DNA from: Setoptus koraiensis
Lineage: Eukaryota > Animalia > Arthropoda
DNA: 64,000 nt
Assembly: GCA_048013815.1 (NCBI GenBank)
Contig: CM106585.1
Coordinates: forward strand, 19,654,001-19,718,000
Reading direction: 5' to 3'
A program made the position numbers and the translations under genes. Below the pieces are notes generated by a model that saw only the letters and a program-made list of their open reading frames with translations, ran no database searches and was not told the DNA's origin. Positions 31,371 to 56,269 of this stretch are shown piece by piece (the first letter of the stretch is position 1; the number at the start of each line of letters is the position of its first letter).

Positions 31371-31577
31371 TCAGATGAGCTAGTGAGATCCGCCGAGACT
31401 TTCCAGTGATGCATTTGCATCTCATAATGGCCATATCAACATGGAGATAATCCTGCAATTAATCGGTGTATATGTGTATGTTTATTTAAACTAATTTAAG
31501 CTAATTTGAGCTAGTTCAAGCTAATTCAGCAATCAGTTTCAGTCGGCGAGATAGAGGAAGCTCAATCATCATTCACA

Positions 31578-33341
31578 ATGGCCATCACCCCCATAGCCTC
31601 AATGCTGGCGCTCACTTTTCTCATTAGTGGCGGTCTCATAAAGCTACAATCGTCGCTGGCGCCCGCGTTGATAGCCACAATAAAGAAACAGGCCCTAATT
31701 AACCAGCAATTGCGTAACAACGAGCAGTTAATAAAGTTGTACCAGCAGCATCAACTGTTGCAGCAGCCGCAGCAGTCTATCTACGCTTCTGACACAGCCA
31801 ATCAATTGCAGCAACTTTTTTCGGCGGCGCAAGCGCCTCTAGTGGCGTCACCACTGATGAGTTCGGCGGCATCAATGCCGGTATCCAATCACCAACAACA
31901 ACAACAACAGCAGCAGCAGCAGCAACACCAAAAGCAACAGTCACAATCGGGTAGCACCACCGTTAGGCCGGCACGGCCGAGCATAACCTTCACACCGCCA
32001 GCCACAACCAGTACACCAGAGATTGCACAACAGCAGTACCAACAGCAGCAGCAACAGCAACAACAGCAGCAGCAACAACAACAACAACAACAACAACAGC
32101 AGCAGCAACAACAGCAGCAACAGCAACAACAACAGCAGCAACAGGTGAGGCCGGCCCTCAATCAGCGACACGATCTCACTAGCCAGACGTTGCCTGCGAC
32201 GTGGCGCGATGGCCGCCAATCGAACCGGCTCACGCTGACCAATGGAACGAGCAACGAGTCGAAATTGTTCAAGATGGTCGGTCGGTTCCGGCGTTCGACG
32301 GCACCCGTTTCAAATGTAGCGAGACCCAAAAAAGAGCAATACGTCCAGTTTGTGCACGTCGACGATCTGGCCGATCACTACTCAGGCGGCGCCAGCGGCA
32401 ACGTGACCGGCTCAGTGTACCAATCGGCAGTTAACCAGGCGCAGACGAGGGCCCCGTCGGTGTGGTCGTGGCTATCTCATCAGCAAGGCGCCAGCAACAA
32501 CATCAACAGAGATGCGCCCGCTAAAGAGGGCAAACAGCGGGACGGCCTGGAGGCCAGTTCTTCGCGTTTGTCGCCGTCCTGGTTGAGCGCTTCGGCGTCG
32601 TCGCTTGCCAGCATAGCGTGGCCGTGGTCGTCGGAAAAGAGTGGCTCGTCGTCTTATTATCCGTCGTCATCTGGTTCGCGCTACAGTTCTAGCTACAATG
32701 GCATGCCTTCGCAATATTACATAAGCAGTAACGGTGATGATTATCAGCAACAGGACTATTATGTGCCTGCATCAACAAAGTATTACAGCGACACCAGTGG
32801 CAACAATCAATTGATGATGCGCAACGGGCTAATAAACGAACGATTCGACGATCATCATCACGAACACGAAATGGCCCATCATGCCGAAGAGAAGGAATTG
32901 AGCTACGTGTTTCCCATATTGTTGGCAGTGTTGATATTGGGCGCACTATTTATACCGTTCATATCGTTGTTCTTTTTCCTGTTGATGTCGGCATTCAATT
33001 GCAACTCGGGCGCAAATTCGGGTTTCGGTCAGATAACGCCAATAATAGGCAGGAGGCGGCGCAAGCGTTCGCTATTGGATCTAGACGATCGGCACAAGCG
33101 CGACTACAATTACACCGGCGGCCAGCCGGCTGTACATGATGATTTTAAGGGCGAAAGTGCGGACACAAACAGCCTAGTGAGCGCCTCTCTATCCAGCATC
33201 TACTGGCAACAGCTCGAGCCAAACATAATGCGCTATCTCGACAAATTGGACACGGCCCTGGAGCGCTGGCACGAGCGCCTGGCCGCCAACAACGGCAACA
33301 ACGACACCAATAATAGCGCTAACAATGGCACTAATTACTAG
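31578..33341 (+). CDS. Uncharacterised single-exon secreted/membrane protein (587 aa) with poly-Q, furin sites and one long hydrophobic segment
   Basis: ATG-initiated 587-codon ORF with hydrophobic N-terminus, Q35 run, RFRR, Ser/Tyr-rich region, HHHEHEMAHH, TM LSYVFPILLAVLILGALFIPFISLFFFLL, then GRRRRKRS. Base composition resembles the other genes, not the flanking desert. Confidence 0.85.
   Translation: MAITPIASMLALTFLISGGLIKLQSSLAPALIATIKKQALINQQLRNNEQLIKLYQQHQLLQQPQQSIYASDTANQLQQLFSAAQAPLVASPLMSSAASMPVSNHQQQQQQQQQQQHQKQQSQSGSTTVRPARPSITFTPPATTSTPEIAQQQYQQQQQQQQQQQQQQQQQQQQQQQQQQQQQQQQQQQVRPALNQRHDLTSQTLPATWRDGRQSNRLTLTNGTSNESKLFKMVGRFRRSTAPVSNVARPKKEQYVQFVHVDDLADHYSGGASGNVTGSVYQSAVNQAQTRAPSVWSWLSHQQGASNNINRDAPAKEGKQRDGLEASSSRLSPSWLSASASSLASIAWPWSSEKSGSSSYYPSSSGSRYSSSYNGMPSQYYISSNGDDYQQQDYYVPASTKYYSDTSGNNQLMMRNGLINERFDDHHHEHEMAHHAEEKELSYVFPILLAVLILGALFIPFISLFFFLLMSAFNCNSGANSGFGQITPIIGRRRRKRSLLDLDDRHKRDYNYTGGQPAVHDDFKGESADTNSLVSASLSSIYWQQLEPNIMRYLDKLDTALERWHERLAANNGNNDTNNSANNGTNY
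32040..32144 (+). repeat. Mixed CAA/CAG repeat encoding 35 consecutive Gln
   Basis: 105 nt of CAR codons. Confidence 0.95.
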
Positions 33342-39300: not shown

Positions 39301-39910
39301 AGTGACCAGTGATGCTGCATGCAAAATATGCACGACGAGCGACAAAGCGACAGGTAGCGATGGGCGTCGACCGCAGGCTAACGGTCAACTGTTGCGTGCC
39401 GTGTCATTACATCGTGTGTGTGTGTGTGTCGCAATACATAACATAACATACAAGTTGCATAACATGACACAATGGAGCGCGTTGAGCCAGGCGCGTGAGA
39501 CGGGCCAATCTGAACGCACAACAGACCGGCGGCGACCCGTTGGCGCGGCCTCGGGTCCCGCACTTCGAGCGCGCCGTGCGTGCCCACATTCGGCCGAAAT
39601 CGATTGTGACAGACGCACATGTCGGGATGTACCTGTGCGCACCTGTCCGTGACCGTGTTTGCAGCGTGCGACCCGCTTTATGGCCGTCGCGTACGGTCTG
39701 TCTCGTGCGCCGGTCGCTGCGGCCGCTCAAGTGGGCAGCCCGCGCGAGTGAGCCGAATGGCCAGATGCCGAGTGGACACTGGCGCAGGCACAGTCGGCCT
39801 AGTGACGGTCGGCCGAGCGACAGTTGGCCGGAAACGGGCTGTTGTGCCGGTTATTATGCTGTGGCACTCATCAGGTGCACTCAATTAACTCGTTCGGCGC
39901 GCAGCTGATA

Positions 39911-39960
39911 CATGACAGATCGACATGACAGATCGACATGACAGATCGACATGACAGATC
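39911..39960. repeat. 13-bp tandem array (CATGACAGATCGA) x4
   Basis: TGACAG at 39913, 39926, 39939, 39952. Confidence 0.95.
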
Positions 39961-40686
39961 GGGCCGCGGATCGGGCGCACGACAGATGGAGCGCACAGAT
40001 TATCTGTGCATCTATCAAGGGCGAGACGCTCGGAGATGCGAGCCGCAGATAGGACAACTGTCAAAAAGACTCGAACGCTGGCCGAGCGCGGGCTATCGGT
40101 CGCTGTTGCCGTCGTCGAGTTATTACAGCCACTGGCCAGCCCCGATATAAGCACGGGATAATTGCAAACGTGTCAACTAATGCCGTTTGTCGTCGTGTGT
40201 CGCCCGATCGTTTACGACTGTCGTCGCGGCTCATCTGCATGCAATATACGCATAATATAAGGCTCTAATTGATCGATCGGCGGTCTGGCGAAATTCCCAA
40301 TTCGGGCCCGATTGTCGCCGCTCACAAGTGTCGTCGCGCACAATTGTCGGCATCGGTCTGAATCGGGCACGCTGGCCGGCGATCGCGACTCGCAACAGGT
40401 CCCAAAGTTTGGGCTGCTCGGCCGACAGTCGGAGCCGCGGGCGCAATCGCCCGCCAGTTGCCCGTCTCGTAACTCGCTCGTCACTCGCTCGTCATTCGCT
40501 CTTCACTCGCGCCACGAAGCCCGGCGAGACCGCGAGTTCGGGCCCGACTGTCCGCTCGCAGGTTGCCAGTCGCAACTTTGCGTTTTTTACCCGCGCGCCG
40601 CTCAACAGGCGACACTCACAATTGTCAATGTCGGACACTGCTGCCCGTAGTCGCTCGCTGCCTCTGCCACCATCTGTGATGCTTGT

Positions 40687-40836
40687 GTGCACCGTGGTGC
40701 ACCGTACGTGGTGCATCATTCGTAGTGGCACATCATACGTAGTGGTGCACCCTACATGGTGGTGCACCGTACGTAGTGGTGCACCCTACATGGTGGTGCA
40801 CCGTACGTGGTGATGCACCGTACGTGGTGGTGCACG
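40687..40836. repeat. 17-bp minisatellite (GGTGCACC core) with A/B alternation (34-bp higher-order repeat)
   Basis: Core at 40744, 40761, 40778, 40795, 40812, 40829; A=AGTGGTGCACCCTACAT, B=GGTGGTGCACCGTACGT. Confidence 0.9.
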
Positions 40837-41853
40837 TAGCGCAAGGCACAGTGTCTGGCGGTGGTGCCGCCGTGCGAGGTGTCGTGCGTGTGCGTGTGTG
40901 CCATGGGCGAGTCATGAGAATTGGGGCAAGGAACTTTGCTGGTTCGCGCTGGCCAACTGGCGTGTTTGCTAATTATTTGAGCTTGCGACGCTCAGGGGGA
41001 AAGCGCCAGGCCATTAGCAGTGGCCACTCTATTTGTCCTTCTTTGTTCTTTTGCGTTCGCACATCTTCTGCCCTTCGAACGCTTCTCTGGCTGCCCCGCT
41101 TCTTCTTCCCCCTCCGCCGCTTCTTCTGCCTTCTGCCCCCTTCCAGCGCTCGTTCCAGCGCTCGTTCCAGCGCTCGTTCTAGCGCTCGTTCGAACGCTTC
41201 GCGAAGCCACCACTTTCAGAGCTGCTCGGGAGCTGCCCTGTCGCTGTCGCTGTCTCGGAGGCAATTGCAGACGGGCCGATAGAAGGAGAGAGTGTGTGAA
41301 CTGCCGCATCACCTTGCAGTCGGCTGGCCGCTGCCCGAGTTGCAATCACATTATACTGGCCAGCACTAGGCTGCCCAGCGTTATACCGACCGGCGTTATA
41401 CTGACCAGCGTTATACTGACCAGCGTTACACTGCCGCCCACTGGACACGGGTTAGACCCAAAACAATCTACTTGTGCTCGTATTTGTGCTAGAATTGGCG
41501 CATGCTCGCCGGCACAAGTGAACCCAAGTGTTGTGAGCCGGACAATATCCGAGCGAGCGGACGACTCCAGTTGGCACAATCTCACAACGACAACAACGAC
41601 AACGACAACAACAAGCACCAGCTGTCGCTCTGATAACAACAATAACACTGCTGCTCACCGGTTGAAACAATCAATGTTTGCCAGCGCAAACGGGCACCAG
41701 GTGACCATCGGCACACAACCACTGCCACTGCCACCACCACGGTACCAGTCTGCTGGCACAACTCTTCTTCTCACGCCCTCGCTTTCGCCTCAGTACCTGG
41801 TCGCTAGACGGCGCTGCTTGCATGCTGATGGGCCTCAATCCGCTGGCTGTGCC

Positions 41854-41913
41854 GGCTCGCGATGGCTCGCGATGGCTCGCGATGGCTCGCGATGGCTTGC
41901 GATGGCTTGCGAT
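41854..41913. repeat. 10-bp tandem array (GGCTCGCGAT) x6
   Basis: Read directly. Confidence 0.9.
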
Positions 41914-43667
41914 AGCGCCACAACAATAGATGGTCATCAATATATAGATCGGCCTGTTGCTCGGTGAGGCTCGCCAATCGAGCGGCCGACCGAGCCGAAC
42001 GAGCCGAACGAACGGGCCGAACGACCGAGCGACCGAACGGGCCGAACGAGCGGCCAGCCGAGCAACGCGAACCCGCAAAATGGCCGGCGACTCGGGGGCC
42101 GTCACGAGCAGCAAAGGGCAACAATTGTCGGCTGCGGGAGCCGAAAAACGCAAAAGCTGGTGCTGCGCCCAGAAATGAACGGGCCGCGTTTGAGGTAACT
42201 CGCATCAAATTGACTTGACTCGGGTGAGACCATTTGACACAGTTGCTGCGGGTCACGCTCACCGCGACCCAGATAGTTAAGTGTAACCAGTCGGCGGCAG
42301 TTGGCGGATTATTTGTGTTTATTGTGTGTCCGTAACGTCCGTGCGACTTGGTCGTCGCATTTGCCGGCCCTTGCAACAACCTTTGTGTCAGCTCTCAATA
42401 AAACTGTCTTGTTCTGTCTTTTATCGCTCACCGAATCACAAAGGGTGCGCCCCAGACTGGGTTAGAGAGCGACACCAGCGAGACAAAGTGAAATGCATCA
42501 GTCAATTTAACTTTATCTGCCATCAGCGAGCAAAGTCAGGTGAGTTCCTATGGCGCTGTTGATTATATGACTACATTATTTTAGTGTGTGTATATGTGTG
42601 TCGCTGCAGAGAGCGAGACACAAATCCAAATGTGTCACAGTTGATTTAGTTGATTAACATTTTTTAAATAAAACACCAAATGTACATGTGTGTCTCACGT
42701 GCAATAATCGTATCAACTCACCGGGCTCACAAACGGTAAACAATCCCGGGTTCCAACTCGCCGAATCCCAATAACAATGTGGCCACGGGCAAACAATTGA
42801 CGCCATCTATCAACCAGTGGACCAGTTAGTCCAGTGACAGAGGTAGTACCTCGATCATGACGCAAACCTATGCACCAGAATTCCCTCAAGTAAAACAATT
42901 GCTATTTACTGCCTTTGCTAGATTGATTGTAACTAATTGGAACAACTGCAAATGGGTTACGAGCGAAGATGTTTGCGAGCTGACATTAAAATGTCAACTA
43001 ACAACAAGTGGTGATAAAACACTTTCCAAAGACTGGTTAACATAACAAAATGTTTGCTTGCGGCATCACAATAGTTTCCTTAACTAACATGATGACAGCG
43101 CCCCTCTTATGTTTTAGAACAACGGTGCAATATTATAACGGAATTATTGACGGAATAAAACAGATAATAAATGGCACAAGACAAACAACCGTTATTCGTG
43201 AGTCACATGATATAGTGCCGTTACATACCAGTGACGTGAGGTGATGTGAATGATGTTTCCATGTATGAATATATAACGTAATTAGATCAATTAATACGAC
43301 ACGCAAATTATGCAAATGACTTGCCCGAATTGCGCTTGCCAACGGGAAGCGTCTTATCACCAGTTAGTGCTTGTTTTATCAGTATGGATTGAGGTGATAT
43401 AAATGCAAGGTTGAGCCAATATTTGCATTGTTGCCAGTGATGGGTGACCCAGTTCGCTGTCCTTCTTATATGAGGAAGCACAATAGTCAACGTTTTTCTG
43501 CCTCACTATATAAAGAAGCCACAATGGGTTGAAGCAACCATCATTCAATGCGAGCCGATCAACTCGACTAAACATCACCAGAGCATAAGCAGCAAACAAA
43601 AGTTTTAAATATATTATTAAGTTATTGTCAAATCAGTGATTCATAGTAACTATCAAAATCAACTAAC

Positions 43668-44247: not shown

Positions 44248-47200
44248 TCATCGACATGAATTGAAAACCATTTTAGTTATCTTAAGAAATTCACTCATAG
44301 TATTGCCAATAATTTCGTCATTTGAGTCCGATTGAACGGTACTGTTCTTTGTGTGGACAAACCAGTCGAAATACTTCTGCCAGACACTTCTCCAATTTCT
44401 TAGGGCGATAGCATCATCCTTGGTCATTCTAAATGATAGTAAAGAATTCCTATCCAAAGTCATCACCACCATATTGCCACTGTTTGCCTCGTTCGAGTTA
44501 GAACTTTTATAATCCTGCAATGTTATATCGGTACCACCAAATAATAGCAGACTGTGGGGCTGCACTACAGAGCCATCTCTGACCACAATCAAGCCTGTCT
44601 CTTGATCCATACGACTATTTAGATAGGTGATAAAATTAGGTCTCCTCTCTTCTGTAGGTTCAAATTGTGAATTGTAATCACTATCATCATCACTTTCATC
44701 TTTACCAGACGCTTCGATTTTGTCTTTTCCCATGGCAATATTTTTCACGATTGATTCTCCAGCTAATCTAACTCGCTGATTTGATTTACTATCCATTGGC
44801 GATATCTTGTTTGGGTAGGAACGACCATTCTTAACCAAACCACGCATTATTCGCACAATCTTGGGATAAAAACCTTGTACAAGTGATGATACAACTATTA
44901 CATTTTCATCCATGTTCATGTTGGGTAAACTGTCAACCGAGTACCATTCATAGGTATTAGTGAAGTTGGCTGCAACTAACATACGAGCGTATAGATTTCT
45001 ACACTCCTGAATGTTGGCCATGGCACTTCTATTGAGATGATTTTCTTCGACAAAATATTCACCCTCAAGCCGGCTCATTGCGGCTGAATCATAATGCTTC
45101 AATAGACTTGCCAAAGCAATGTGATCTGACATGTTGTTGGCGCTCTCTTTGTTTGGTTTTTGACCTAGGGCCTCCAAGAGAAATTTCCTCTTAATGTCCC
45201 TCAATTGCTGCTTATCGATCTGCATGGACAAAAATGGATCTTGTGTCGAACTTAGCATAGCACTAGCGTTCAAAATCGGATAGAGACATCTCAGTGCGGC
45301 TGCCAGTACTAATGCTACGGATAGTCTAGGATGAGTTGTGAAACCAGATATTCGCTTTCCTAATACTGTGAGATTCTCTTCTTGATTTAGAACCCTGAGT
45401 GATATGAGTTCCTCCAAAGCACTGTTTATGGCGCTAGAGCTTGGATGTTGAATGGCCTGAGATAAGAATGTGACCGATTTCTCATTTGGACAATGGCACT
45501 TGACTTCCATTATGACAGATTCTAATGGTATTCTCAAGAGCTCTGGCTTGGGAAAATCTTGAAACTTAGCCTCGTCTTCTCTTCTATATAATCGGAAACA
45601 TTCACCAGGACAAGTACGTCCAGCTCGACCAGATCGTTGCTTGGCATTTGCTTTAGAGATCCATCTTGTTCCGAAAGTCGACATATTAAGATCCTGGTCG
45701 TAATCAATGGAGTTACACAGACCACAGTCGATCACATAGGCTACATCGTTTATTGTAATTGACGTCTCGGCTATGTTTGTGGCAAGAACAACCTTGCGTT
45801 CGAATTCCCCTACCCTACCAAAAATCAATCTCTGTTCGCTGAGTGGTAACTTTGAATGAGCTAAATACACCTTCAATTTGTTGCGAGTTTTCCTATCAGG
45901 CAGTGACTCGAGTTCTTTTTGTAAAGCTTTCATCTCTTTCCATCCAGGCATAAAGCATAATATAGAACCTGAGTCTCTGGTTACATCTATATGTTGGACC
46001 AATTGCACAATCAGATCCAAATTGAGACGTGGATTTCTAGATGGGGCATTATTACAGTTGATATTGATAGCATCTGCAATATCTTCCAGATATAAGTTCT
46101 GAACCGGAAAGCAACGTCCTGGTACTGAAATGATGGGACAATTATCGAAATATTGTGAAAATAACGACGCATCCATGGAAGCGCTCATAAATATCACTCT
46201 TAAATCTCTTCTTCTCGCCAAAAGTCTTTTTATGAGTATCAATAAGAAATCTGTAGTGCAGTCACGTTCGTGTACCTCATCTATGACTAAGTGAGTAATT
46301 CCCTTGAGGTCTGCATTTCTGTGTAACTTTCGTAGTAGCATACCAGTTGTGAAGAACATGATAGCATTTATATCTCTATTGGGCAATTTCGCATCAAATC
46401 TTACTTGATGACCCACACTGTGTCCCGCACCGGATTCACCAAGTTCTGCTGCAACACGCTCTGCAAGAGATATAGCTGAAATTCGTCTGGGCTGTGTTAC
46501 TGCTACATTGACATAGCCTTGACTGTTGGATTCGTCAGCAACAAAGTTTTCCAATATAAATTGAGGTACCTGAGTAGATTTTCCACAACCGGTGTCTCCA
46601 GCTATAACTATCGTACGATAACTTTTGAGACTGGACATTATCTGTGATTTTAATGACCTTGTTGGAAGACGATCTTGTGATGACATCATATCGTAAAAAT
46701 GATCATCAGTGTCAATCTTTTTTTCCTTTTTTTCAAAGACTATTTTTAATTGATTCCAAGAGTTTCGAATTTTCAAATCATTAGGTTCTGTGTATGGACG
46801 AGATGTGAATATGTCTATGATGGCGTTGGCGGGCAGTTTAGTAAATGTTTCGCTACCAGTATTCGCACACTCTTCGAACTCAACACCTTCGTCCAGTGCC
46901 AAATGTTTTCCTTCTATATCCCCTGCTTCAAGGCAGTCATAAGACTTTCTCGCAGCCGCTACCTGATAGTCAATTAGATTATCTATGCATTCATCATATT
47001 TTGATATGAAGGACATCATTTGCTGTTTCAAGCTCATTGGTATTGGGTTCACTAAAACAGGACCTCTTGTTTGGTCCAAATTAGAATCGCCACTAATCTG
47101 TACTCTTAGGTTAGAATCAATGGAGTTGCTAGTTCTCAGATGATGTATGGCAGCCAAGGCTGCAAGATTCTTGGCGTCTTTTTTGTTTAACGCCTTGGCT

Positions 47201-48162
47201 GTATAAGATCTTTGCTGTGGCCAATTCATTGTGAGCCAACAAACCCAGACATCTTTGTTCACTGCCTTATAATCAGTTTTAAGATCCTCAACTTTCTTGA
47301 ATTGATTTTTACACATAGTGATGATTTGATTCAAGTACATGGCAGCTTTTCCAGGACTGACAAGCTCATTGTAGATAGCGGGTGTGATATCTAGAAGTTT
47401 GATATCATCTAAAGTTATATTGTCACATTTTAAGTTTCTCAAGAATTCTTGGACCTCCCTTTCCTGTGCTTGCCTCTTGAGTTCTTGCTCTTCTTTTCTA
47501 GATCTACTAGACATAGCTTGCGATGACTGATTGTATCTAGGTGGACCAGGTCTATTGCTATGGTTGTTGCTATTCCTGAATCCCGAGTTTGTATGCATGT
47601 GTCTTTGTGAGTCTCTGTTATTACTGAAGTTATTGTTATGAACTGGTGCTGAGACAGGCTGTTGAGATAACTGTGCCGACGACGATTGCGGCTGATATCT
47701 GGCGGAAAGCGTTTGATTAGGAGGTGGTGGCTGCCTGAAATGATCATTTCTTGGCTGATTATTATAGTTCGGCCTTCTGTTTTGTTGTTGATAAAACTGT
47801 TGTTGGTGTTGCTGGTTATGGTACTGTGGTCTATTATTTCTTTGTTGATAATATTGTTGGCGTCCATATGTTTGCTGGTTGTTCATCGAGTGTTCATCCA
47901 CATAGGGATCAGCGCGTGACTGTGACTGACCATAGTAGTTGTTTCGGTTGTTGTTGTTTGTATTTCCTTTTTGTGGTTCCATGTTTAATTTGTTTAATAT
48001 TCTCTTGAAAGATGATCTAATTTTGAGTATGATAATTCGTGATGATGATAGATTATATTTGCCAATTGCATCCGCCTTGATAATAATGGAATGATATCTA
48101 CTAGTGAGTATGTTACTATAAAGAGAAAATCTCGAATGCAAATGGTTGAACAGACTGATCAT
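44248..48162 (-). CDS. DHX30: DHX30-like DEAH/RHA RNA helicase, intronless (alternative start ATG at 47982)
   Basis: GDTGCGKSTQVPQ (motif I), TQPRRISAIS, DEVHE (II), SAS (III), LATNIAETSITI, QRSGRAGR (VI), HA2 region; N-terminal dsRBD-like WLTMNWP...KKDAKNLAALAA typical of DHX30. The subfamily call (vs DHX36/29/57) is less certain than the family call. Confidence 0.8.
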   Translation of the reverse strand: MISLFNHLHSRFSLYSNILTSRYHSIIIKADAIGKYNLSSSRIIILKIRSSFKRILNKLNMEPQKGNTNNNNRNNYYGQSQSRADPYVDEHSMNNQQTYGRQQYYQQRNNRPQYHNQQHQQQFYQQQNRRPNYNNQPRNDHFRQPPPPNQTLSARYQPQSSSAQLSQQPVSAPVHNNNFSNNRDSQRHMHTNSGFRNSNNHSNRPGPPRYNQSSQAMSSRSRKEEQELKRQAQEREVQEFLRNLKCDNITLDDIKLLDITPAIYNELVSPGKAAMYLNQIITMCKNQFKKVEDLKTDYKAVNKDVWVCWLTMNWPQQRSYTAKALNKKDAKNLAALAAIHHLRTSNSIDSNLRVQISGDSNLDQTRGPVLVNPIPMSLKQQMMSFISKYDECIDNLIDYQVAAARKSYDCLEAGDIEGKHLALDEGVEFEECANTGSETFTKLPANAIIDIFTSRPYTEPNDLKIRNSWNQLKIVFEKKEKKIDTDDHFYDMMSSQDRLPTRSLKSQIMSSLKSYRTIVIAGDTGCGKSTQVPQFILENFVADESNSQGYVNVAVTQPRRISAISLAERVAAELGESGAGHSVGHQVRFDAKLPNRDINAIMFFTTGMLLRKLHRNADLKGITHLVIDEVHERDCTTDFLLILIKRLLARRRDLRVIFMSASMDASLFSQYFDNCPIISVPGRCFPVQNLYLEDIADAININCNNAPSRNPRLNLDLIVQLVQHIDVTRDSGSILCFMPGWKEMKALQKELESLPDRKTRNKLKVYLAHSKLPLSEQRLIFGRVGEFERKVVLATNIAETSITINDVAYVIDCGLCNSIDYDQDLNMSTFGTRWISKANAKQRSGRAGRTCPGECFRLYRREDEAKFQDFPKPELLRIPLESVIMEVKCHCPNEKSVTFLSQAIQHPSSSAINSALEELISLRVLNQEENLTVLGKRISGFTTHPRLSVALVLAAALRCLYPILNASAMLSSTQDPFLSMQIDKQQLRDIKRKFLLEALGQKPNKESANNMSDHIALASLLKHYDSAAMSRLEGEYFVEENHLNRSAMANIQECRNLYARMLVAANFTNTYEWYSVDSLPNMNMDENVIVVSSLVQGFYPKIVRIMRGLVKNGRSYPNKISPMDSKSNQRVRLAGESIVKNIAMGKDKIEASGKDESDDDSDYNSQFEPTEERRPNFITYLNSRMDQETGLIVVRDGSVVQPHSLLLFGGTDITLQDYKSSNSNEANSGNMVVMTLDRNSLLSFRMTKDDAIALRNWRSVWQKYFDWFVHTKNSTVQSDSNDEIIGNTMSEFLKITKMVFNSCR

Positions 48163-49861
48163 ATCCCAGTGAGCCAATGTGAGGATGAATATAAATCTAT
48201 TGCAATTTGTTGTGTGTCTATCCTTGATTTTACTACAGAATAATAATAATAATAATGATAAATGTATGCTATATCAATAATTGAACCTAATAAACAGCAG
48301 TATCGATTGGTGTGTATAACTAGTTACAGTGGTAATAATGGTATAGCGTATGCTAATTTTTATTGTTGATGGTGACAGTTGTATAAATAATAATGGTGAT
48401 GGTCTTGTTAATGTTATAATTGCAGCTAGACTCGTAGGTCGATCTACCAAAAAGAAACATATGTAATAGTGGCGTCGACGGGTATGGTAAATGTATTTTA
48501 AGCATTATCCATTGGCTTCTCAGTTCACCTGGTGAGCAAAGGCAATGTGCTCTTGTGTTCCTCAAGTAATGCATGAGCACCTCCGTCGACTATATAGGCG
48601 GCGCTCCACCACCACTGTTCTGTAATCGGGCGACACTCCACATTGAATGGAGTCCATTCGATCCTGTGCAGTGGATATTCATAAATAGTTCCGCGCGTGA
48701 ATATATTACCGTTGAAAGATATTCCGTGGATTCACTGGATTGCGCATCGTCCGTTTGCAAAATTAATGCACCGCCTGCATTACTTTTGCACGGCCAAGTT
48801 GGTTGTTCGTCGTTGCAAAAGCAGCTCTGTTGACCCTCGCATCTATTGCCCGCTATCCACCTGGCCCTTGTCCATTGCCCACTGGCAGAATGGGCATGCC
48901 CACATGGGTAAGCTCTCTCTACCCGCAGCGAAAATAACAACAACAAAAAGCATTATTATCAATGTTTCACAGAGGCTATGGCCGGATCAAAACACATTGC
49001 CGAATCCACAACAGCATCACCATTGCCGACGCCAGACAGTGTTTGCTTGTGTGTGTTTGCTTGTGAGTAAGTGTGTGTGTGCCTGAATGTTGTCGAGTTA
49101 TGTAATGTTACATGTTATATAATGATCAGAAAATATAGGGTGGCCGCCCAACAGCTAACACTGCTGGTTCCATTGAATAACGCAAGAATTATTGTAGTTC
49201 CTTTTTCTGTCTGTAGAGCTCGCATTGGCTAACAGTACACACAGTTATTGCCGTACAGGTGCTCTCTCTACCAATCGAGTTGGTAACTAATCTCGGTGTA
49301 ACAATTGTCCTGGGAGCACAGCAAAGCTGAGCAGAAACAATTTAGATACAAGTTGTGCATTATCCAAAGCACTCAGGTGTAAATATCATTACATGATTCA
49401 CAATCGAATCATCAAGCACAGTAGCATTCTGTGGCACAAAGCTTGATTTCGTTCAGCACAACCATAGAACTTTTGCAGCGTGGAAGGCTGTCTAGAACAG
49501 AAAGTGTAACGCTAGCTTTCAAGGGGCCACCCTGCAATTTCCGAAGATATACAATATCACAACAAAACAGATAGATGAAATGATTCTAGATAGTACCATT
49601 TATGTTTCACGATAATGATCATCTATCATCAACCACACAAACTAGAGATTATTCAGCCGATGACCATCCTAGAAAATTCTGACAAAATAATAGGCTAACG
49701 CAGCAACAAACTTGGGTGCCTTACAACACATCAAAACGGGACAGTTTTTTTCTCCTGGATAACTGCCACAAATATCAATCAACTCACCTGGTCTTACTGC
49801 TTTATCGTCGCCATAATATTGTATTAATCTTCATCGTGTCGTTAAGCAACTTGCATCAAAG

Positions 49862-50707
49862 ATGCTTGAACCTATAAGACACATATTGTCTCAGCAGAGA
49901 ATCATTTTGGCTAGCAACTCTCCGCGACGACAGGAGATTCTGAAAATGGTTGGTCTCAACTTCGAGACAATACCTTCAGCTTTTGAGGAGAACCTAGATA
50001 AGTATTCATTCTCACATCCATGCGAGTATGTCAAAGAGAATGCCAAACAAAAAGCAATCGAAGTGTGGAATCGTCTTTCCAGTGCCTCGAAGAAACAGCA
50101 ATCCGATTCGACTCAAGTACCGGATAACAATAAATGTCCTGACTTAGTCATTGGCGCGGACACTGTGGTTACATTGGAGGGCGAAATTATTGAGAAGCCC
50201 AAAGATGCCGAAGACGCTTATGAGATGCTAAGAAAATTGAGTGGACAAAAGCACACTGTATTCACTGGCGTTGCCTTAGTAACCAAGACAAAACAATTTC
50301 CACAAATCAAACACCCCAGTTCTCAACCAACCAGCCTGGAATCTCATCATCCACTTCAGTGTAGTGCCGACAAGTCCAAGGCACTATTATTAGAGTCAAA
50401 CGAAGGAGCACATTCACTAACTACCGATTTCACCAAGACGGTATCTGGCGCACTATCGGGAGATCAACAAGATTATTTAGTAACTACATTCCACGAGTCT
50501 ACAGATGTTGTTATGACTGAAATGACTGATGATATCATACGTGGTTATATTGCGACAGGAGAACCATTTGATAAAGCGGGAGCCTATGCAATCCAGAGCA
50601 ACGGGGCCACCATAGTAGAACAGATAAAGGGTGACTATTACAATGTCGTGGGCATCCCACTGCATCGATTGTGTCGCGAGCTTTACATATTGCATTATGA
50701 TCTTTAG
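49862..50707 (+). CDS. Maf-family nucleoside triphosphate pyrophosphatase (dTTP/UTP, YhdE type; homologous to the ASMTL N-terminal domain)
   Basis: IILASNSPRRQEIL, IGADTVV, EKP, LSGQKHTVFTGV, GEPFDKAGAYAIQ. Confidence 0.93.
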   Translation: MLEPIRHILSQQRIILASNSPRRQEILKMVGLNFETIPSAFEENLDKYSFSHPCEYVKENAKQKAIEVWNRLSSASKKQQSDSTQVPDNNKCPDLVIGADTVVTLEGEIIEKPKDAEDAYEMLRKLSGQKHTVFTGVALVTKTKQFPQIKHPSSQPTSLESHHPLQCSADKSKALLLESNEGAHSLTTDFTKTVSGALSGDQQDYLVTTFHESTDVVMTEMTDDIIRGYIATGEPFDKAGAYAIQSNGATIVEQIKGDYYNVVGIPLHRLCRELYILHYDL

Positions 50708-51239
50708 AATATTCCGACGATGACTTGATAGGACAATTAATATAGTTTGTGATATATCGCCACCAAACTTCATATACAATTACCATGTATGTCATGATTT
50801 CGATCAAATCAAAAATAGGTTTGCGACGACGAACTACAACGGGGTACTATCATATGTAGCACTCTTATGCATCTCTATCGAAGACGAACATCCTAATCAT
50901 GACTGCTTGCCTACATCAGAATGCATCCAAAATAGAAACTAACTGTCAACGCATTGATATCATACTTGTAGTATGGGATATATAATTTGGTATTTATTGA
51001 TAACGCATTAGATTGTATAATATTATTTTCTATAACTTGCAATAGAACAAGTATATGTGAATACAAGAATACATTGTATGGATCAGTATATAGCAGCTGT
51101 ACGTCAATAAAGACCGTGGAATCTCTCGGCATTCAATATTATTGTCAAAGAAAGTAGAAAATCCAATTATCCATGAGATCAGCCGGAACATCTGACAAAG
51201 ATTGCCTATTAAAATCAGCCAATTTTTTGTTCCTCTCTT

Positions 51240-53594
51240 CTAGGCTCGTCGCAGGTAGTTTCCCAAAGAGGGCACTGAGTTTTTCTTAAAATCATTCTGT
51301 AGCGGTTGATAGTCAACTATCACATATCTATCACATAGGAACATTGGCTCTAGGCAGACGGGTAGCTCAGTTCTGTCACAATCAAACATCAAACAGTAGT
51401 CGAAAGTGCGCCGCTCTAAAAACGGTGCTTGGCCCACGTTGTAATATGTTGTTACGATTATCTTACAGGAGTCGAACTTTTCAAAACTTTTGTCATACTT
51501 AGCTTTTACGAGCTCATGCTTCTCTTTATGATCATCATTAATTTCTATTTGATGCGACAGATTGTATTGCTCAAGATCTAATTGGTTATGTCCAAGGATT
51601 GAAAAGTCAATTTTTTCCGTGTCCATAAGTTTGATGATTGAGCTCACCGAGCCGAATTCTTGTGCAACCATTAAAACTGTGCGATTTAAGTGAAGTACTA
51701 CTTTCACAAAAGCTGTTAAAGCAGGTGATATCTTACTTTCATCACTAAGAACTTTCTCATTTAATACATAATAATCATCTGATACAGCGGCACGTATGAC
51801 AAACTTCTTTTGTTCAAAGTCCAGCTGACTCGTGATGTGATTTGTACTCCTCACTAATTTTCCGCCTAAATCTAGAGATAATTTGAGATCTTTTTTCCCC
51901 TCATCTTCAGGTATGAGTATTTGTCTGAGATGATCGTAACGCCAATCAATGGGGTACATCAGTCTTAATATATTTGTCAAACGTTGATTGTTTTTCCGTG
52001 CGCTTTGAATGAAATCAATTCTATAAACTATGTTTGGATCGGTTTTGGGTAGAGAGTTGTCGACTGATAATTTGACGCTTGTTTCATCACTATATATTAT
52101 AAAACCAGTTGTCTTGGCAACATTGATATTCTGTGAGGTCAAGTCTCGATTGGCATCATCGTCGATGCTTATTGCCACTCTCTTCCTTGATAAATTCTCA
52201 GTTTTCAAGGGTCCCAGACTGTCCCTGTACCTGGGATGACGCTCAAATATCACATAACTGTCTTGGCTGATGCCCAAGCCTTCATCATTTTCATCATCTG
52301 GTAGCTTGTCACTCCTAATACTTAGCTTGGAAATGCCTGAACCTTGACTCTCCGCTTGTGAAGAGTCGTAGGTCCAGAATGTGTTAGAACTCTTCACACG
52401 TTCTTGAGATTTATTTGAGTCCTCACTTAGTACGTTGAACCAATACTTGAAAAATTTAAGTTGTGCCTCGTTCAGGTGACCAATAGCAACAGGTGCTAAT
52501 TTTTTCATCACACTGGATGATGTGAGGGCTTCAGGTTTGAATGTCTGGGACATGAGAACGCATTCTAGTAGGCGTTCACATCTTGAGCAATCTCTCAATA
52601 CTTCTTTGAAGTCAGGTCCTAGAGTCAAATCTGTATGATGCTCGATCAGTTTATTTCTCAATATCATGAGGTCACGTTTGTGATTTTGGTTAACATCTAT
52701 TCCATGCAACGCCGGCCCATCCTTTAGATAAACAAGTAATCCTTTATCTGTTGGGCCGTGTCTGTCCTCAATCATTAAACTATATAAACTTACTTGACCA
52801 ACGTGAGAGCTAGCAAAGTACTGATTGCCGGTCTTCAGTTCAAGAGGTAATATTTTAGTGTGAGTTTCACCAGACTTATGAATTTTCACGACACCTGTAA
52901 GATCAATTTTCCCTTTAAGTCCATATTTAGTCGCCCATATTGTCTCTTCGATATCTAAAATTTCTTCTACTTTCACCTGCGTATTGTTGTCGTTGCTGAG
53001 AGGGTGCATTGGTCCGATAAGGAGGTATTTCTTTAGCCAGCCACTAATATTTGGTATGTATTCTTTTGACAACTTCAACAAAGTATTGAGGTCCAGTTCA
53101 AGCGAATAACATTGCTGGATCGTAATAAAATTGTTGACATTGGTAAGTAATACTTGGTACAAAATGTTCTCATCAATAATTTTGCGTTCGCATGCATATT
53201 GAAATAACTCGTGGACAATGTTGCCTATTGTCATGGCCTGATTGGTGCTTGTCCAACCATTGAACATATTCCCTAGCCATGTTTTTCTGCCACAATATAG
53301 AGATGAGACGACAAAGGTACATGGCATCAGCTCATCTGGATCTATCACTAAAAGTCCGCTCCCATTTGTTACATTAAAAACGCTAGTTATTGGGTCATAT
53401 TCTGCCCCTATCAAATGAATAATAGTGCTAGGTTTCACTTCTGTGTTAGTCCAAAGTCCTGAAAGATTCACGACACATTCCGATGGTCTCTGATTGTCGA
53501 GAGATTCAGTTCTCAGTTGTAATACTCTTGTTACCTTGAGGAATTCTATACTGACAACGCGAAGTCTCCTAGAAAGGGGGGCTTTTGGGGCCAT
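51240..53594 (-). CDS. DNA2: DNA2 nuclease with degenerate, truncated helicase; intronless
   Basis: YCGRK plus CSRCERLLEC Fe-S ligands, GNIVHELFQ, ETIWATKYGLKGKID, PLELKTG, QVSLY; the C-terminal region is recognisably DNA2 helicase 1A but lacks the Walker motifs. Confidence 0.92.
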   Translation of the reverse strand: MAPKAPLSRRLRVVSIEFLKVTRVLQLRTESLDNQRPSECVVNLSGLWTNTEVKPSTIIHLIGAEYDPITSVFNVTNGSGLLVIDPDELMPCTFVVSSLYCGRKTWLGNMFNGWTSTNQAMTIGNIVHELFQYACERKIIDENILYQVLLTNVNNFITIQQCYSLELDLNTLLKLSKEYIPNISGWLKKYLLIGPMHPLSNDNNTQVKVEEILDIEETIWATKYGLKGKIDLTGVVKIHKSGETHTKILPLELKTGNQYFASSHVGQVSLYSLMIEDRHGPTDKGLLVYLKDGPALHGIDVNQNHKRDLMILRNKLIEHHTDLTLGPDFKEVLRDCSRCERLLECVLMSQTFKPEALTSSSVMKKLAPVAIGHLNEAQLKFFKYWFNVLSEDSNKSQERVKSSNTFWTYDSSQAESQGSGISKLSIRSDKLPDDENDEGLGISQDSYVIFERHPRYRDSLGPLKTENLSRKRVAISIDDDANRDLTSQNINVAKTTGFIIYSDETSVKLSVDNSLPKTDPNIVYRIDFIQSARKNNQRLTNILRLMYPIDWRYDHLRQILIPEDEGKKDLKLSLDLGGKLVRSTNHITSQLDFEQKKFVIRAAVSDDYYVLNEKVLSDESKISPALTAFVKVVLHLNRTVLMVAQEFGSVSSIIKLMDTEKIDFSILGHNQLDLEQYNLSHQIEINDDHKEKHELVKAKYDKSFEKFDSCKIIVTTYYNVGQAPFLERRTFDYCLMFDCDRTELPVCLEPMFLCDRYVIVDYQPLQNDFKKNSVPSLGNYLRRA

Positions 53595-54060
53595 TTTATC
53601 TCAATTTCAAACCAGAAGAGCCTATAGCATAGTCATGCCGTCAAAAAAAAAGAACAGTTTTAGAAGGTCTTGAATCGACCAGTAGGAGGCGCGATCGTGC
53701 GTGTAGCTCTTGCTCACGAAACACACACACACGCACAAACTTACACCGAAAGAGAGAAAGAGAGAAAATTCATGTTGTACGTGAATGAAGCGTCATCAAA
53801 GGCGCGCAATCGAACAAGTCATTGGCAGCCACTTGGTTTTGGAACACCGTGTACAATCTCGTAGTCTGCCTGTCTGTGCAATTGTTCAAGTGTTTCACAT
53901 CAGTGCTGTCGTCGGACTGCATATCTACCTTTGAACCCTAGACACCAAAGTGGATATCTTTTTTCTCTTTTAATTTGATAAAATTTCTATTTATTATTAG
54001 GTTTGATATTTATAATTCGGACCTCGGACACTATTTAATGATCTATTATTTTTGATTACA
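53595..54060. promoter_or_regulatory. Probable bidirectional promoter shared by DNA2 and BRPF1
   Basis: Divergent ATGs 466 bp apart; CA/GA tracts in between. Confidence 0.55.
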
Positions 54061-55668
54061 ATGTCAAATTACACCAATGACATAGATATTACTGCCAGAT
54101 TGCCCATCATAATCTATGCGTCGGGAAAGAACAATCAGCACAACGGTTTTGAAACCAACAACAACAATAATAATAATATTAATAATAACAATATCAATGC
54201 TAACGGCAGCAACAATATTAACAACAGCAACAGTAACTCTAAATCAAACGATTGCAACAATCACACCGTCGGCTCGGCCAGTCTACCAGATCCATCTTTT
54301 CGTCTTATCGAGGGCTACAAAAACAGAATAAGAGCCATCGGAAAGAAGAATAACAAGAAAAGAAGAAAGACAGAAAAACCCGTGGGAGGCTACTTTCGTT
54401 ACACAGAGCCAACCGCGGAAGAACTCTTAGAACTAATTGAATATGATATGGATGAGGAAGATACTCAATGGCTAGAATTAATGAACAATAAACGCACGGC
54501 AGCTGGCCAAAGGAAGGTCACCGCAGCAGAATTTGAACAAATAATGGATAGACTAGAGAAGGAATCCTTCTTCAAAACAAACGGCAATACTGCTCCTCTT
54601 GTAGATGATGATGCCGTTTGTGCAATTTGCAACGATGGCGGATGTGAGAATGCTAATGCAATTATATTCTGTGATATGTGCAATCTTGCTGTACACCAAG
54701 AATGTTATGGTGTACCCTACATACCTGATGGTCAATGGCTTTGTCGTAGATGTCTACAATCGCCATCTAGGAATGTTGATTGTGTATTGTGTCCAAACAA
54801 AGGAGGAGCTTTTAAACAGACCGACGACAACAAATGGGCCCATGTTATATGTGCATTGTGGGTGCCAGAGGTCTGCTTTGCCAATACAGTTTTCCTTGAA
54901 CCAATTGATAGCATTAATCAAATACCGCAAGCTAGATGGAAATTGGTTTGTTATATATGTAAACAGAAAAAAGCTGGCGCTTGTATACAATGTCACAAGC
55001 CAAACTGTTATGTACCATTCCATGTGACTTGCGCTCAACAAGCAGGTCTTTACATGAAAATTCAAGCTTTCAAATACCCGACCCCATCCGGTATGATTAC
55101 CGATGTAAAAAAAGAAGCTTATTGTGACGCTCACACACCAAAAAAAGATCACAAACCTGGATCGGGGATGTATTCCAGTTGTGACTCAGACGAGGAACCA
55201 GATGAACGACAACTCAAAAAGTATAAGGCAAAAAAAGAGAAAATGCGAAAAGCAAGAAAGATACTCGCAGAAAAACGTGCAGGCGCATCAAACCCAATAT
55301 CAATACCAAAGATTCCAGAAGAAAAATTGCCCGAAATAGCCAACTTCTTGAAGGGACCTGATAATCTGGACAAGTTAGATTTCATGCGCAACGTCTTAGG
55401 TTATTGGGAAATGAAAAGAAAAACAAGAAACGGCGTACCCTTACTTAGAAGACTTCAAATCTCGTACACCAGCAAGAGTGAGGCCGTTAGGAGCGAACCA
55501 GATACCGACGGACGACTTTTAACGTTACGATATGACTTGGAAAAAGTGCGTCTCTTGATAGAGCTTATAAAGAAGAGAGAGCGCTTGAAGAAAGATATTC
55601 TTGACTTTGAGAAAAGAATTGTAACGTCTGAGTTAAAAGAAATAGATTCACATGATGCAAAAAGTTAA
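54061..55668 (+). CDS. BRPF1: BRPF/peregrin-family MYST acetyltransferase scaffold (EPC-PZP-EPC II), C-terminally short; intronless
   Basis: [11 protein letters not shown]1 [30 protein letters not shown], Zn-knuckle/PHD2 [71 protein letters not shown]. Confidence 0.92.
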
Positions 55669-55699
55669 CATATTCTTTAAGTGTTATTCAAAAACTCCT

Positions 55700-56269
55700 T
55701 TAATTTAGCTTTCTTGCAGCAGCTTTGACTTGTGCTGCGATACGGTCTAGATCACGGACACCGTCCTTCGAGAGTTTTCGACCTCCGTTGGCATCCTTCT
55801 CTATCCATTTGATCTCTTCTAAGGACTGTAACGCTTTCCTGGCCACAGATGAGCTAGATCTGCAGAAATGTGATGGGCGAACACCGCGTCTGTAACGACC
55901 ACCGTAGATCTTTGTGATTGCTCCAACACCGACAGGCGCCCTGTAGTATAGATGACGGGCTATTGAAGCGCAACGCGTGTAATACCAGTCAGCGTCATAT
56001 GGTGCTAGTTCCTTGAAGGTGGCTGTTTTGACGGTGTCTACCCACTCAGGCACTGGAAGTTTGCCAGTTCTATGTTTTAGGGGATGTAAAAAAAAATAGG
56101 ATTAGCAATGTGAAATTGAGGGCTTGAAGATTGCCTAGTGAGGCACGAGTTGATGTTGCGGTTGTATTTACTTTTTAAGGTAGGCAGCTAGAGCCCTGAC
56201 GAGGTCGTCTTGTCGCACATCCTTCACTCCGACGGATTTAACGTTTGAGTTGATCTTAACTTTTACCAT
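55700..56269 (-). CDS. RPS19: 40S ribosomal protein eS19; join complement(56172..56269,55700..56069), 155 aa
   Basis: [12 protein letters not shown]|[50 protein letters not shown]; GT-AG intron 56070-56171 restores the frame. Confidence 0.97.

What the first reader, a model, noticed from the sequence alone, without database searches (positions are those of the whole stretch)
51240..51827. DNA2 with an intact nuclease but a dead, truncated helicase (nuclease-only DNA2)
Seen: nuclease motifs (KGKID, ELKTG, QxxxY) and all four Fe-S cysteines are intact. The segment that should hold Walker A reads DYYVLNEKVLSDESKIS with no GxxGxGKT, and the Walker B region reads FDYCLMFDCDR. The ORF stops about 30 codons later, so the whole second RecA domain is missing, and no helicase-like exon lies between 51240 and the convergent Maf gene. 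Known: DNA2 normally has GMPGTGKT and DEASQ plus a full SF1 motor (recalled from memory), and the nuclease rather than the helicase is the essential activity. Inference: this lineage keeps DNA2 as a flap/resection nuclease with a pseudo-helicase scaffold.
Basis: partly seen in the sequence, partly recalled or inferred. Interest (0 to 1): 0.78.

Follow-up and report, generated by a model that had tools for sequence, protein, structure and literature searches.

The report
Motor-less DNA2 nuclease in gall mites
This mite's copy of DNA2, normally a DNA-cutting enzyme fused to an ATP-driven motor, keeps an intact cutting half but has only a dead, half-length remnant of the motor, and the same stripped-down form is kept by natural selection across a whole group of related mites.

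Summary
Window 51240-53594 (-) is one uninterrupted 784-codon ORF and a genuine DNA2 orthologue. The PD-(D/E)XK catalytic residues and all four Fe-S cysteines are intact. The stalk/beta-barrel and a folded helicase-1A-like domain are present. Walker A, motif Ia, Walker B and motif III are destroyed, and the ORF stops at the 1A/2A boundary.

No 2A (AAA_12) coding sequence exists anywhere in the 64-kb window. Contigs from two independent studies reproduce the stop codon exactly.

This is not decay. dN/dS against an 85%-identical relative is 0.09 overall and 0.12 in the pseudo-helicase. Eight further sequence clusters (33-85% identical) share the same truncation and their own conserved replacement motifs (YYxLNE, DCD).

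An exhaustive search and a tree place this clade inside acariform-mite DNA2. The closest full-length relatives come from Panonychus, Dinothrombium and Leptotrombidium. At least one other mite lineage lost 2A independently, at a syntenic, orthologous locus.

I read it as an ATP-independent flap/resection nuclease in which 1A survives as the tunnel-extending scaffold.

Not shown: expression, enzymatic activity, and the absence of a second DNA2 elsewhere in the genome. No earlier scan note and no paper I found describes this.

The parts
51240..53594 (-). Complete single-exon ORF of the short DNA2 (784 codons plus a TAG stop at 51240-51242)
   Evidence: Same architecture in relatives.
53340..53573 (-). 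N-terminal OB-fold domain (about residues 8-85). In mouse Dna2 this domain is the Rpa70AB-binding domain. Boundaries are approximate.
   Evidence: AF2 model: beta strands 8-84, pLDDT about 90. Aligned to the mouse OB region. Role taken from PMC4716839.
52515..53339 (-). PD-(D/E)XK nuclease domain with its Fe-S cluster (about residues 86-360). Catalytic residues H128, D231, E252, K254. Cysteines C101, C336, C339, C345.
   Evidence: Pfam Dna2/Cas4. These residues are invariant in 30 sequences. They align with mouse His164/Asp278/Glu299/Lys301.
51825..52514 (-). Stalk helices and beta-barrel (about residues 361-590). Boundaries are approximate.
   Evidence: AF2 secondary structure. Foldseek also matches Ighmbp2/Upf1 barrel plus 1A.
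51243..51824 (-). Pseudo-helicase domain 1A (residues 591-784). RecA-like fold with no ATPase motifs. It ends after the helix SLGNYLR.
   Evidence: dN/dS 0.118. Clade-invariant residues listed.
51726..51773 (-). Relic of the Walker A/P-loop (residues 608-623, YYVLNEKVLSDESKIS). The YYxLNE part is invariant in the six closest sequences.
51372..51404 (-). Relic of Walker B (residues 731-741, FDYCLMFDCDR). Canonical D-E has become F-D, and the DCD triplet is invariant in the six closest sequences.
50708..51239 (.). Spacer between the DNA2 stop and the convergent Maf stop. It holds no 2A-like coding remnant. There is an AATAAA at 50998-50993 (- strand), 241 nt after the stop.
49862..50707 (+). Convergent Maf gene, which bounds the locus. 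The same DNA2-Maf arrangement is found in the 85%-identical relative L005.

Best explanation
This is the mite's DNA2 orthologue, and it has lost its motor.

Kept: the OB domain, the Fe-S PD-(D/E)XK nuclease 'doughnut', the stalk/beta-barrel, and a folded helicase-1A domain. In mouse Dna2 these parts together build the tunnel through which ssDNA threads.

Lost: the whole helicase-2A domain, which in mouse Dna2 hangs over the tunnel mouth and supplies motifs IV-VI, and every ATP-binding or hydrolysis motif of 1A.

Inferred consequence: the protein cannot bind or hydrolyse ATP or translocate. It most likely acts as an ATP-independent, RPA-guided ssDNA flap/end-resection endonuclease. Domain 1A would serve as a structural extension of the DNA tunnel and a residual phosphate-binding surface. 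Unwinding would be left to partner helicases, and lower ssDNA affinity for long flaps is expected.

Shown here: the architecture, residue conservation, purifying selection, lineage-wide distribution, and an independent recurrence of the truncation in another mite lineage.

Inferred only: nuclease activity, absence of ATPase activity, the scaffold role of 1A, and expression.
For: 1. DNA2 identity and intact nuclease: Pfam Dna2 at 146 bits; phmmer to mouse Dna2 at 3.5e-60; catalytic H128/D231/E252/K254 and C101/C336/C339/C345 invariant.

2. Motor loss: no AAA_11 or AAA_12 hit at E<=1. The motif table shows Walker A, Ia, II and III all degenerate. There is no 2A homology at E<=1 in the window or in 8 related loci with up to 10 kb of flank, with a positive control at 1e-12 to 1e-44.

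3. Not an artefact: contigs from independent studies are identical across the stop. In a relative, the convergent neighbouring gene starts 220 nt after the stop.

4. Maintained by selection: dN/dS is 0.089 overall, 0.064 in the nuclease and 0.118 in pseudo-1A, at dS about 0.9. The replacement motifs YYxLNE and DCD are invariant across sequences only 35-38% identical overall.

5. Fold: the AF2 model has pLDDT 78 and pTM 0.73. Foldseek to Dna2 5EAN gives TM 0.78 normalised by the query and 0.60 by the target, which is Dna2 minus 2A.

6. Orthology and lineage: the sequence sits in a 100/100 clade of 9 short sequences, nested in a 100/100 acariform clade that also holds full-length Panonychus, Dinothrombium and Leptotrombidium DNA2. 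No full-length sequence nests among the short ones in a 188-sequence tree.

7. Recurrence: P0062/P0205 (short) is sister to P0061 (full length) at 98/97 support. The two share a convergent TPR neighbour that is 52% identical. The AU test rejects a single origin of all short forms (p=0.005).

8. Mechanistic plausibility from PMC4716839 and PMC8069077: the barrel and 1A extend the tunnel while 2A lies outside it; the helicase domain mainly augments DNA affinity; the ATPase is dispensable for viability in yeast, whereas the nuclease is essential.
Against: - There is no direct evidence of transcription or protein. No run is on record as RNA, and only the patchy gene-limited coverage in run X7 hints at RNA.
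- The rest of this genome could not be searched for a second, canonical DNA2.
- Nuclease activity is inferred from residues only.
- Losing 2A removes three of the five protein-contacted phosphate-binding pockets of the helicase half (three on 2A, two on 1A; PMC4716839), so activity on long flaps may be seriously impaired.
- The strongly conserved new motifs in pseudo-1A could mean a new function rather than a mere scaffold.
- The eriophyoid identity of the genome rests on earlier scan notes plus indirect evidence.
Confidence: 0.75

Rival explanations
1. Specialised or decaying paralogue: the genome also carries a canonical nuclease-helicase DNA2 elsewhere, and this short copy is a duplicate that is free to lose its motor.
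For: The rest of the assembly could not be searched with the tools at hand. Two full-length sequences of unknown origin (P0067, P0079) are sister to the clade of 13 short sequences. In principle they could be paralogues from the same organisms.
Against: - dN/dS of 0.09-0.12 excludes decay.
- The exhaustive search of 1.84 billion representatives, which includes Logan assemblies of the same kind of samples, gives 15 short but only about 9 full-length acariform clusters. None of the full-length ones nests within the short clades.
- The unnamed full-length hits whose samples were checked come from other samples than the short ones.
- In the parallel lineage, the short and full-length genes occupy the same syntenic locus in different species, so they are orthologues, not paralogues.
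- No other note in this genome's 2390 scan notes mentions DNA2. This is weak evidence.
Confidence: 0.1
2. Gene-model or assembly artefact: the stop is an error, or a spliced downstream exon supplies RecA2.
For: The related proteins came from ORF-style gene calls on contigs, which would cut a gene at an intron.
Against: - Two independent studies' contigs are identical through the stop.
- No 2A-like sequence at E<=1 is found in 64 kb of the window or in up to 10 kb flanks of 8 related loci, while the control detects 2A across an intron.
- The 1A ATPase motifs are destroyed anyway.
- The stop position at the domain boundary is shared by sequences 35% identical.
- Convergent genes follow closely after the stop.
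Confidence: 0.03
3. Neofunctionalised pseudo-helicase: domain 1A is kept because it has become a binding module for a new partner or ligand, for example a helicase recruited in trans or a regulator, and not only because it props up the DNA tunnel. This can coexist with the main explanation.
For: - The replacement motifs YYxLNE and DCD, plus R756, D761 and LGxxLR, are invariant across sequences that are otherwise only 35-38% identical.
- The stem leading to the clade is long, 1.29 substitutions per site, which fits a burst of change followed by constraint.
- Another scan note reports a dead UPF1-type half-helicase reused as a tail on F-box proteins in the same genome (unchecked).
Against: No partner or ligand is known. 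In the independently truncated lineages (P0062, P0064, P0065), 1A keeps canonical motifs Ia, II and III to varying degrees and not the new ones. The common denominator of the short forms is therefore the fold, not the new motifs.
Confidence: 0.15

Closest known systems
Canonical eukaryotic DNA2 nuclease-helicase (mouse Dna2, PDB 5EAN/5EAW/5EAX; yeast Dna2)
   Same: Orthologous by phylogeny. Shares the OB domain, the Fe-S PD-(D/E)XK nuclease with all catalytic and cluster residues, the stalk/beta-barrel and the 1A fold. TM 0.78 over the whole query.
   Different: No 2A domain and no Walker A, Ia, Walker B or III motifs, about 260 residues shorter. It therefore cannot be an ATPase or translocase. 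Known DNA2s are described as bifunctional. Yeast helicase-dead point mutants are laboratory alleles that keep the domain (PMC8069077).
Bacterial AddB (AddAB helicase-nuclease)
   Same: A Fe-S-stapled RecB-family nuclease fused to a catalytically dead SF1 helicase-like module that is kept for DNA handling. The Dna2 nuclease superposes on the AddB nuclease (PMC4716839). This is a functional analogy, partly recalled from general knowledge.
   Different: As recalled from general knowledge and not tested here: AddB keeps both RecA-like lobes, has the helicase-like part at the N-terminus, works as a heterodimer with the AddA motor, and reads Chi. There is no common descent of the degenerate state.
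Stand-alone Fe-S PD-(D/E)XK nucleases (Cas4, EXO5/MGME1-like)
   Same: Motor-less nucleases with a Fe-S cluster or tunnel. The Pfam Cas4 model hits the nuclease core, and Foldseek finds Cas4 and MGME1 as weak matches.
   Different: They lack the OB domain, the stalk/barrel and the 1A-like domain. The mite protein is clearly derived from a full DNA2 and not from these families.
Other truncated mite DNA2s found here (P0062/P0205, P0064, P0065, P0069, P0070, P0115)
   Same: Same breakpoint just after motif III, and Walker A lost. All are acariform by phylogeny.
   Different: They show a graded state. P0062 still has motifs Ia, DEASQ and GDPxQL, with AAA_11 at 1e-22. P0064 and P0065 are intermediate. 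P0069 and P0070 give no AAA_11 hit. The window's clade has no AAA_11 signal and has its own replacement motifs. P0062 arose independently.

Membership tests
DNA2 (nuclease-helicase) | Dna2-type PD-(D/E)XK nuclease domain with catalytic His/Asp/Glu/Lys | tested here: met
   Pfam PF08696 at 146 bits against a cut-off of 22.4. H128, D231, E252 and K254 align with mouse H164, D278, E299 and K301 and are invariant.
DNA2 (nuclease-helicase) | Four-cysteine Fe-S cluster stapling the nuclease extensions | tested here: met
   C101, C336, C339 and C345 are invariant in 30 sequences. Actual cluster binding cannot be tested here.
DNA2 (nuclease-helicase) | OB, stalk/beta-barrel and 1A arranged around a DNA tunnel | tested here: met
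   AF2 model (pLDDT 78). Foldseek to 5EAN: E 5e-51, TM 0.78 by query. This rests on a predicted model only.
DNA2 (nuclease-helicase) | SF1B helicase domain 1A with Walker A (GxxGxGKT), motif Ia, Walker B (DExx) and motif III | tested here: not met
   The sequence reads NEKVLSDESKIS, QEFGSVSS, FDCD and VDYQPLQ at the four positions. No AAA_11 hit at E<=1.
DNA2 (nuclease-helicase) | Helicase domain 2A (AAA_12, motifs IV-VI) | tested here: not met
   The ORF ends 23 residues after the motif III aspartate. There is no tblastn hit at E<=1 in the 64-kb window, with the control positive.
DNA2 (nuclease-helicase) | Descent from the DNA2 lineage (orthology) | tested here: met
   Nested in the 100/100 acariform DNA2 clade. 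The DNA2-Maf synteny is shared with L005.
DNA2 (nuclease-helicase) | ssDNA-dependent ATPase / 5'-3' translocase and RPA-stimulated flap endonuclease activities | not testable with these tools
   Needs recombinant protein.
AddB-like 'dead helicase plus Fe-S nuclease' (functional analogy only) | Both RecA-like lobes retained, and partnership with an active motor subunit | tested here: not met
   Only one lobe (1A) is present. No partner is known.

The most novel reading that the evidence does not exclude
Acariform mites have dispensed with the DNA2 motor repeatedly: at least two independent truncations at the same 1A/2A boundary, followed by stepwise erosion of the 1A motifs. This defines a natural 'minimal DNA2' made of OB, Fe-S nuclease, barrel and a 1A scaffold that suffices for animal life. 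In the gall-mite clade, the scaffold has additionally been rebuilt around new invariant motifs (YYxLNE, DCD) that may mark a new interaction.
Probability: 0.55. Interest if true: 0.7.

Novelty: new variant of a known kind. Interest (0 to 1): 0.62.

Why it matters
DNA2 is treated as a universally bifunctional, essential nuclease-helicase. What its motor is for is still debated: Okazaki flap processing, fork recovery, or acceleration of resection.

A whole animal lineage, plus at least one independent one, keeps the nuclease under strong selection after deleting 2A and killing the ATPase. That is a natural separation-of-function experiment, and it makes three points.

- The motor is dispensable in a metazoan.
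- The 1A domain is needed for something other than ATP hydrolysis. This fits the structural view that it extends the DNA tunnel.
- It gives a graded evolutionary series (full length, then truncated with motifs, then truncated and degenerate) that can be tested biochemically.

It also fits a pattern in this streamlined genome of repair proteins reduced to parts: earlier scan notes report a scaffold-only REV1 and a rewritten MGMT. The finding raises the question of which helicase or nuclease (RecQ, Pif1, GEN1/Yen1) compensates.

Tried and rejected
1. Remnant of 2A after the stop. One tblastn alignment (P0007) ran 37 codons past the stop to 51129 and looked like a motif IV relic. A targeted search gave nothing significant. 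The first about 150 nt after the stop are not conserved with the 85%-identical relative L005. I rejected it as chance.

2. Naming the organisms behind the unnamed short sequences. Cluster look-ups returned no names or accessions for them. Paper searches for the run and sample accessions found nothing. Walking along the contig of P0003 gave no conserved marker. Only 'acariform mite' is established by the tree. 'Eriophyoid' comes from earlier notes. It is supported indirectly by about 27 unnamed close relatives of the neighbouring DHX30-like gene, whose nearest named hits are acariform mites at 39-40% identity.

3. RNA evidence. No run is on record as RNA and only contigs were available. Run X7 shows gene-limited, uneven coverage (the RPS19 gene deepest, intergenic stretches zero) that looks like RNA, but it could be low-coverage DNA. 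I leave it as inconclusive.

4. Literature. The eriophyoid (PMC7738191, bioRxiv 2026.08.24.746826) and Demodex (PMC9218549) genome papers do not mention DNA2. Searches for a naturally helicase-less DNA2 found none.

5. Conserved spacer between DNA2 and Maf. Rfam found no match. Tandem Repeats Finder found nothing in the GC-rich blocks.

Full report
**What is there**

Window 51240-53594 on the minus strand is a single uninterrupted ORF of 784 codons ending in TAG. Pfam assigns it to Dna2 (PF08696, 146 bits against a cut-off of 22.4), with a Cas4-type hit on the nuclease core. It finds no AAA_11 or AAA_12 even at E<=1.

Against solved structures the only real match is mouse Dna2 (3.5e-60). Residues 31-765 align to residues 72-792 of the 1056-residue chain, so the alignment runs through motif III of helicase domain 1A and then the mite protein ends.

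- The catalytic residues H128, D231, E252 and K254 correspond to mouse His164, Asp278, Glu299 and Lys301 as listed in PMC4716839.
- The four cluster cysteines C101, C336, C339 and C345 are invariant in a 30-sequence alignment.

In the helicase part, every ATPase motif is degenerate.

| Motif | Canonical sequences | This protein |
|---|---|---|
| Walker A | G-PG(T/S)GKT | NEKVLSDESKIS |
| Ia | (S/T)xTHxAVDN | QEFGSVSS |
| Walker B | DEASQ | FDCDR |
| III | GDxxQLPP | VDYQPLQ |

The stop comes 23 residues after the motif III aspartate, just after the helix SLGNYLR, which canonical proteins also have (SLFxRL). The truncation is therefore a clean cut at the 1A/2A boundary.

**Artefact, missing exon or decay?**

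*Assembly.* Contigs of runs from two other studies (X2, X4) are identical to the window over 49800-54149, including the stop.

*Missing exon.* Full-length canonical DNA2 queries match the window only in this gene. The 2A domains of eight canonical DNA2s, four of them from mites, give no tblastn hit at E<=1 anywhere in the 64-kb window. They also give none in eight related loci with up to 10 kb of flank. The same queries find 2A in two canonical control loci at 1e-12 to 1e-44, once across an intron. The spacer to the convergent Maf gene is 532 nt. An apparent read-through similarity just beyond the stop is neither significant nor conserved in the closest relative.

*Decay.* Against the 85%-identical orthologue L005, which also has Maf convergent downstream, dN/dS is 0.089 overall. 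It is 0.064 in the nuclease half and 0.118 in the pseudo-helicase, at dS about 0.9. The pseudo-1A domain is a selected protein domain, not a dying one.

**How widespread**

The word-index search found five relatives of 815-899 aa with only the Dna2 and Cas4 Pfam domains. One is 85% identical and four are 35-38% identical. All of them stop at the same place and lack the ATPase motifs. They share invariant replacement motifs (YYxLNE, FDYC..DCD, R756, D761, LGxxLR). In one of them the convergent neighbouring gene begins 220 nt after the stop.

The exhaustive phmmer search (1257 hits) added more members of this clade (P0058-P0060). It also found further short DNA2s, with a graded loss of motifs.

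| Sequence(s) | State |
|---|---|
| P0062 | Walker A lost, but motifs Ia, DEASQ and GDPxQL kept; AAA_11 at 1e-22 |
| P0064, P0065 | Intermediate |
| P0069, P0070 | No AAA_11 hit (E<=1) |

The closest full-length proteins carry names: Panonychus citri, Dinothrombium tinctorium and Leptotrombidium deliense, with Tachypleus further out.

In an IQ-TREE (LG+C20 PMSF) tree:
- All mite-like sequences form a 100/100 clade.
- The window lies in a 100/100 clade of nine short sequences on a long stem (1.29).
- Thirteen short sequences group together at 90/83 support.
- The short P0062 is instead sister to the full-length P0061 at 98/97.

The AU test rejects one clade for all the short forms (p=0.005). 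P0061 (full length) and P0205 (the P0062 cluster, short) are 43% identical. Both are followed by a convergent TPR gene that is 52% identical between them. They are therefore orthologous loci, and the truncation happened in place.

A 188-sequence FastTree shows no full-length sequence nested in the window's clade. It also shows a further short, degenerate sequence (P0115) next to full-length ones.

The lineage identity 'eriophyoid/gall mite' comes from earlier scan notes. It is indirectly consistent with the neighbouring DHX30-like gene. That gene has about 27 unnamed close relatives (56-96% identical) in Logan and metagenome data, followed by a gap to named acariform mites at 39-40%. DNA2 evolves much faster than this neighbour in the lineage (35-38% against about 64% identity).

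**Structure and mechanism**

An AlphaFold2 model built on the alignment has pLDDT 78 and pTM 0.73. The pseudo-1A folds as an alternating beta/alpha domain at pLDDT 80-90. Foldseek ranks the three mouse Dna2 structures first (E 5e-51). TM is 0.78 normalised by the query and 0.60 by the target, which is what Dna2 minus one domain should give. The barrel-plus-1A assemblies of Ighmbp2, Upf1 and Senataxin follow.

In the mouse structure (PMC4716839):
- The nuclease forms a doughnut.
- The beta-barrel and 1A pack on it and extend the central tunnel.
- 2A hangs over the tunnel mouth, with solvent-exposed phosphate pockets.
- The authors conclude that a major role of the helicase half is to raise DNA affinity.
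- They also state that the ATPase is dispensable for yeast viability and for resection in vitro.

Yeast helicase-dead alleles are viable but sensitive to replication stress and dependent on Yen1 (PMC8069077).

The mite protein has kept exactly the tunnel-forming parts and shed the external one. SF1 ATP sites lie between 1A and 2A and need motifs I, II, V and VI. An ATPase is therefore excluded on two grounds.

My reading is an ATP-independent, probably RPA-guided flap/resection endonuclease (the OB domain is kept). Domain 1A would be scaffold and residual DNA contact. Unwinding would be left to other helicases, and affinity for long ssDNA would be reduced. This is inference: no activity or expression was measured. 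The invariant new motifs leave room for an added function of pseudo-1A.

**What remains open**

- A second, canonical DNA2 elsewhere in this genome could not be searched for. Selection, tree topology, synteny in the parallel lineage, the samples of the unnamed full-length hits and the absence of any other DNA2 note in the scan make it unlikely, but they do not exclude it.
- Transcription is not shown. Run X7 has gene-limited, uneven coverage that would fit RNA, but it is kept as contigs of unknown library type.
- No paper I could find mentions DNA2 in eriophyoid or Demodex genomes or describes a naturally helicase-less DNA2. Tetranychus is listed as having a DNA2 orthologue (PMC13571142).

**Verdict**

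It is a lineage-wide, selected, motor-less DNA2, and 2A was lost recurrently in acariform mites. I class it as a new variant of a known kind, with moderate-to-high interest.

Noticed in passing
window 50732-51090: A block of about 360 nt in the spacer between the convergent DNA2 and Maf genes is 78% identical to the relative L005 (4901-5259). This holds even though synonymous sites of the flanking genes are about 50% different (dS about 0.9). The first 150 nt after the DNA2 stop are not conserved. There is no Rfam match. The block may be overlapping 3' UTRs or a conserved non-coding element.
   Followed up: partly
window 2000-25000 and 33500-42000: Two long blocks of about 60% G+C lie against about 40% elsewhere. 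CpG observed/expected is 1.24. They have no ORF of 300 aa or more, no tandem arrays and no similarity to each other. They flank the Delta-like gene (MNNL plus EGF, 25985-33341). A related contig (L009) is also G+C-rich (54%) around AT-richer genes.
   Followed up: partly
L013:10001-12292 against L016:330-3311: An independent truncation of DNA2 in another, AT-rich (27% G+C) acariform lineage. The 763-aa protein ends 29 residues after an intact GDPxQL motif III and has lost only Walker A. Its 43%-identical, syntenic counterpart is full length with all motifs.
   Followed up: yes
proteins P0064, P0065, P0069, P0070, P0115: Further short DNA2s (738-804 aa) of unknown mites, at intermediate stages of 1A motif erosion. 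P0115 groups with full-length sequences in the FastTree and may be a third independent loss.
   Followed up: partly
proteins P0041 (Hymenolepis weldensis, 755 aa) and P0037 (Elysia marginata, 1148 aa): These named non-mite DNA2 entries carry nuclease-type Pfam domains (Dna2 in both, plus PDDEXK_1 in P0041) but none of the helicase domains. They could be fragmentary gene models or further helicase losses.
   Followed up: no
window 44248-48177 (-): DHX30-like DEAH helicase with intact DEAD/Helicase_C/HA2 domains and a Q/N-rich N-terminal extension of about 230 residues. It has about 27 unnamed close relatives in Logan and metagenome data, and its nearest named hits are acariform mites at 39-40% identity.
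   Followed up: partly
window 54052-55668 (+): BRPF-like protein of 538 aa with EPL1, PHD and zf-HC5HC2H domains only. No bromodomain or PWWP is detected by Pfam. This agrees with a separate first-reader note on this window.
   Followed up: partly
window 49800-55700, run X7: Contigs of run X7 (organism C, a different study) cover only genic stretches at more than 99% identity. Depth is highest on the RPS19 gene and zero in the intergenic stretches. The pattern suggests a (meta)transcriptome that contains this mite.
   Followed up: no
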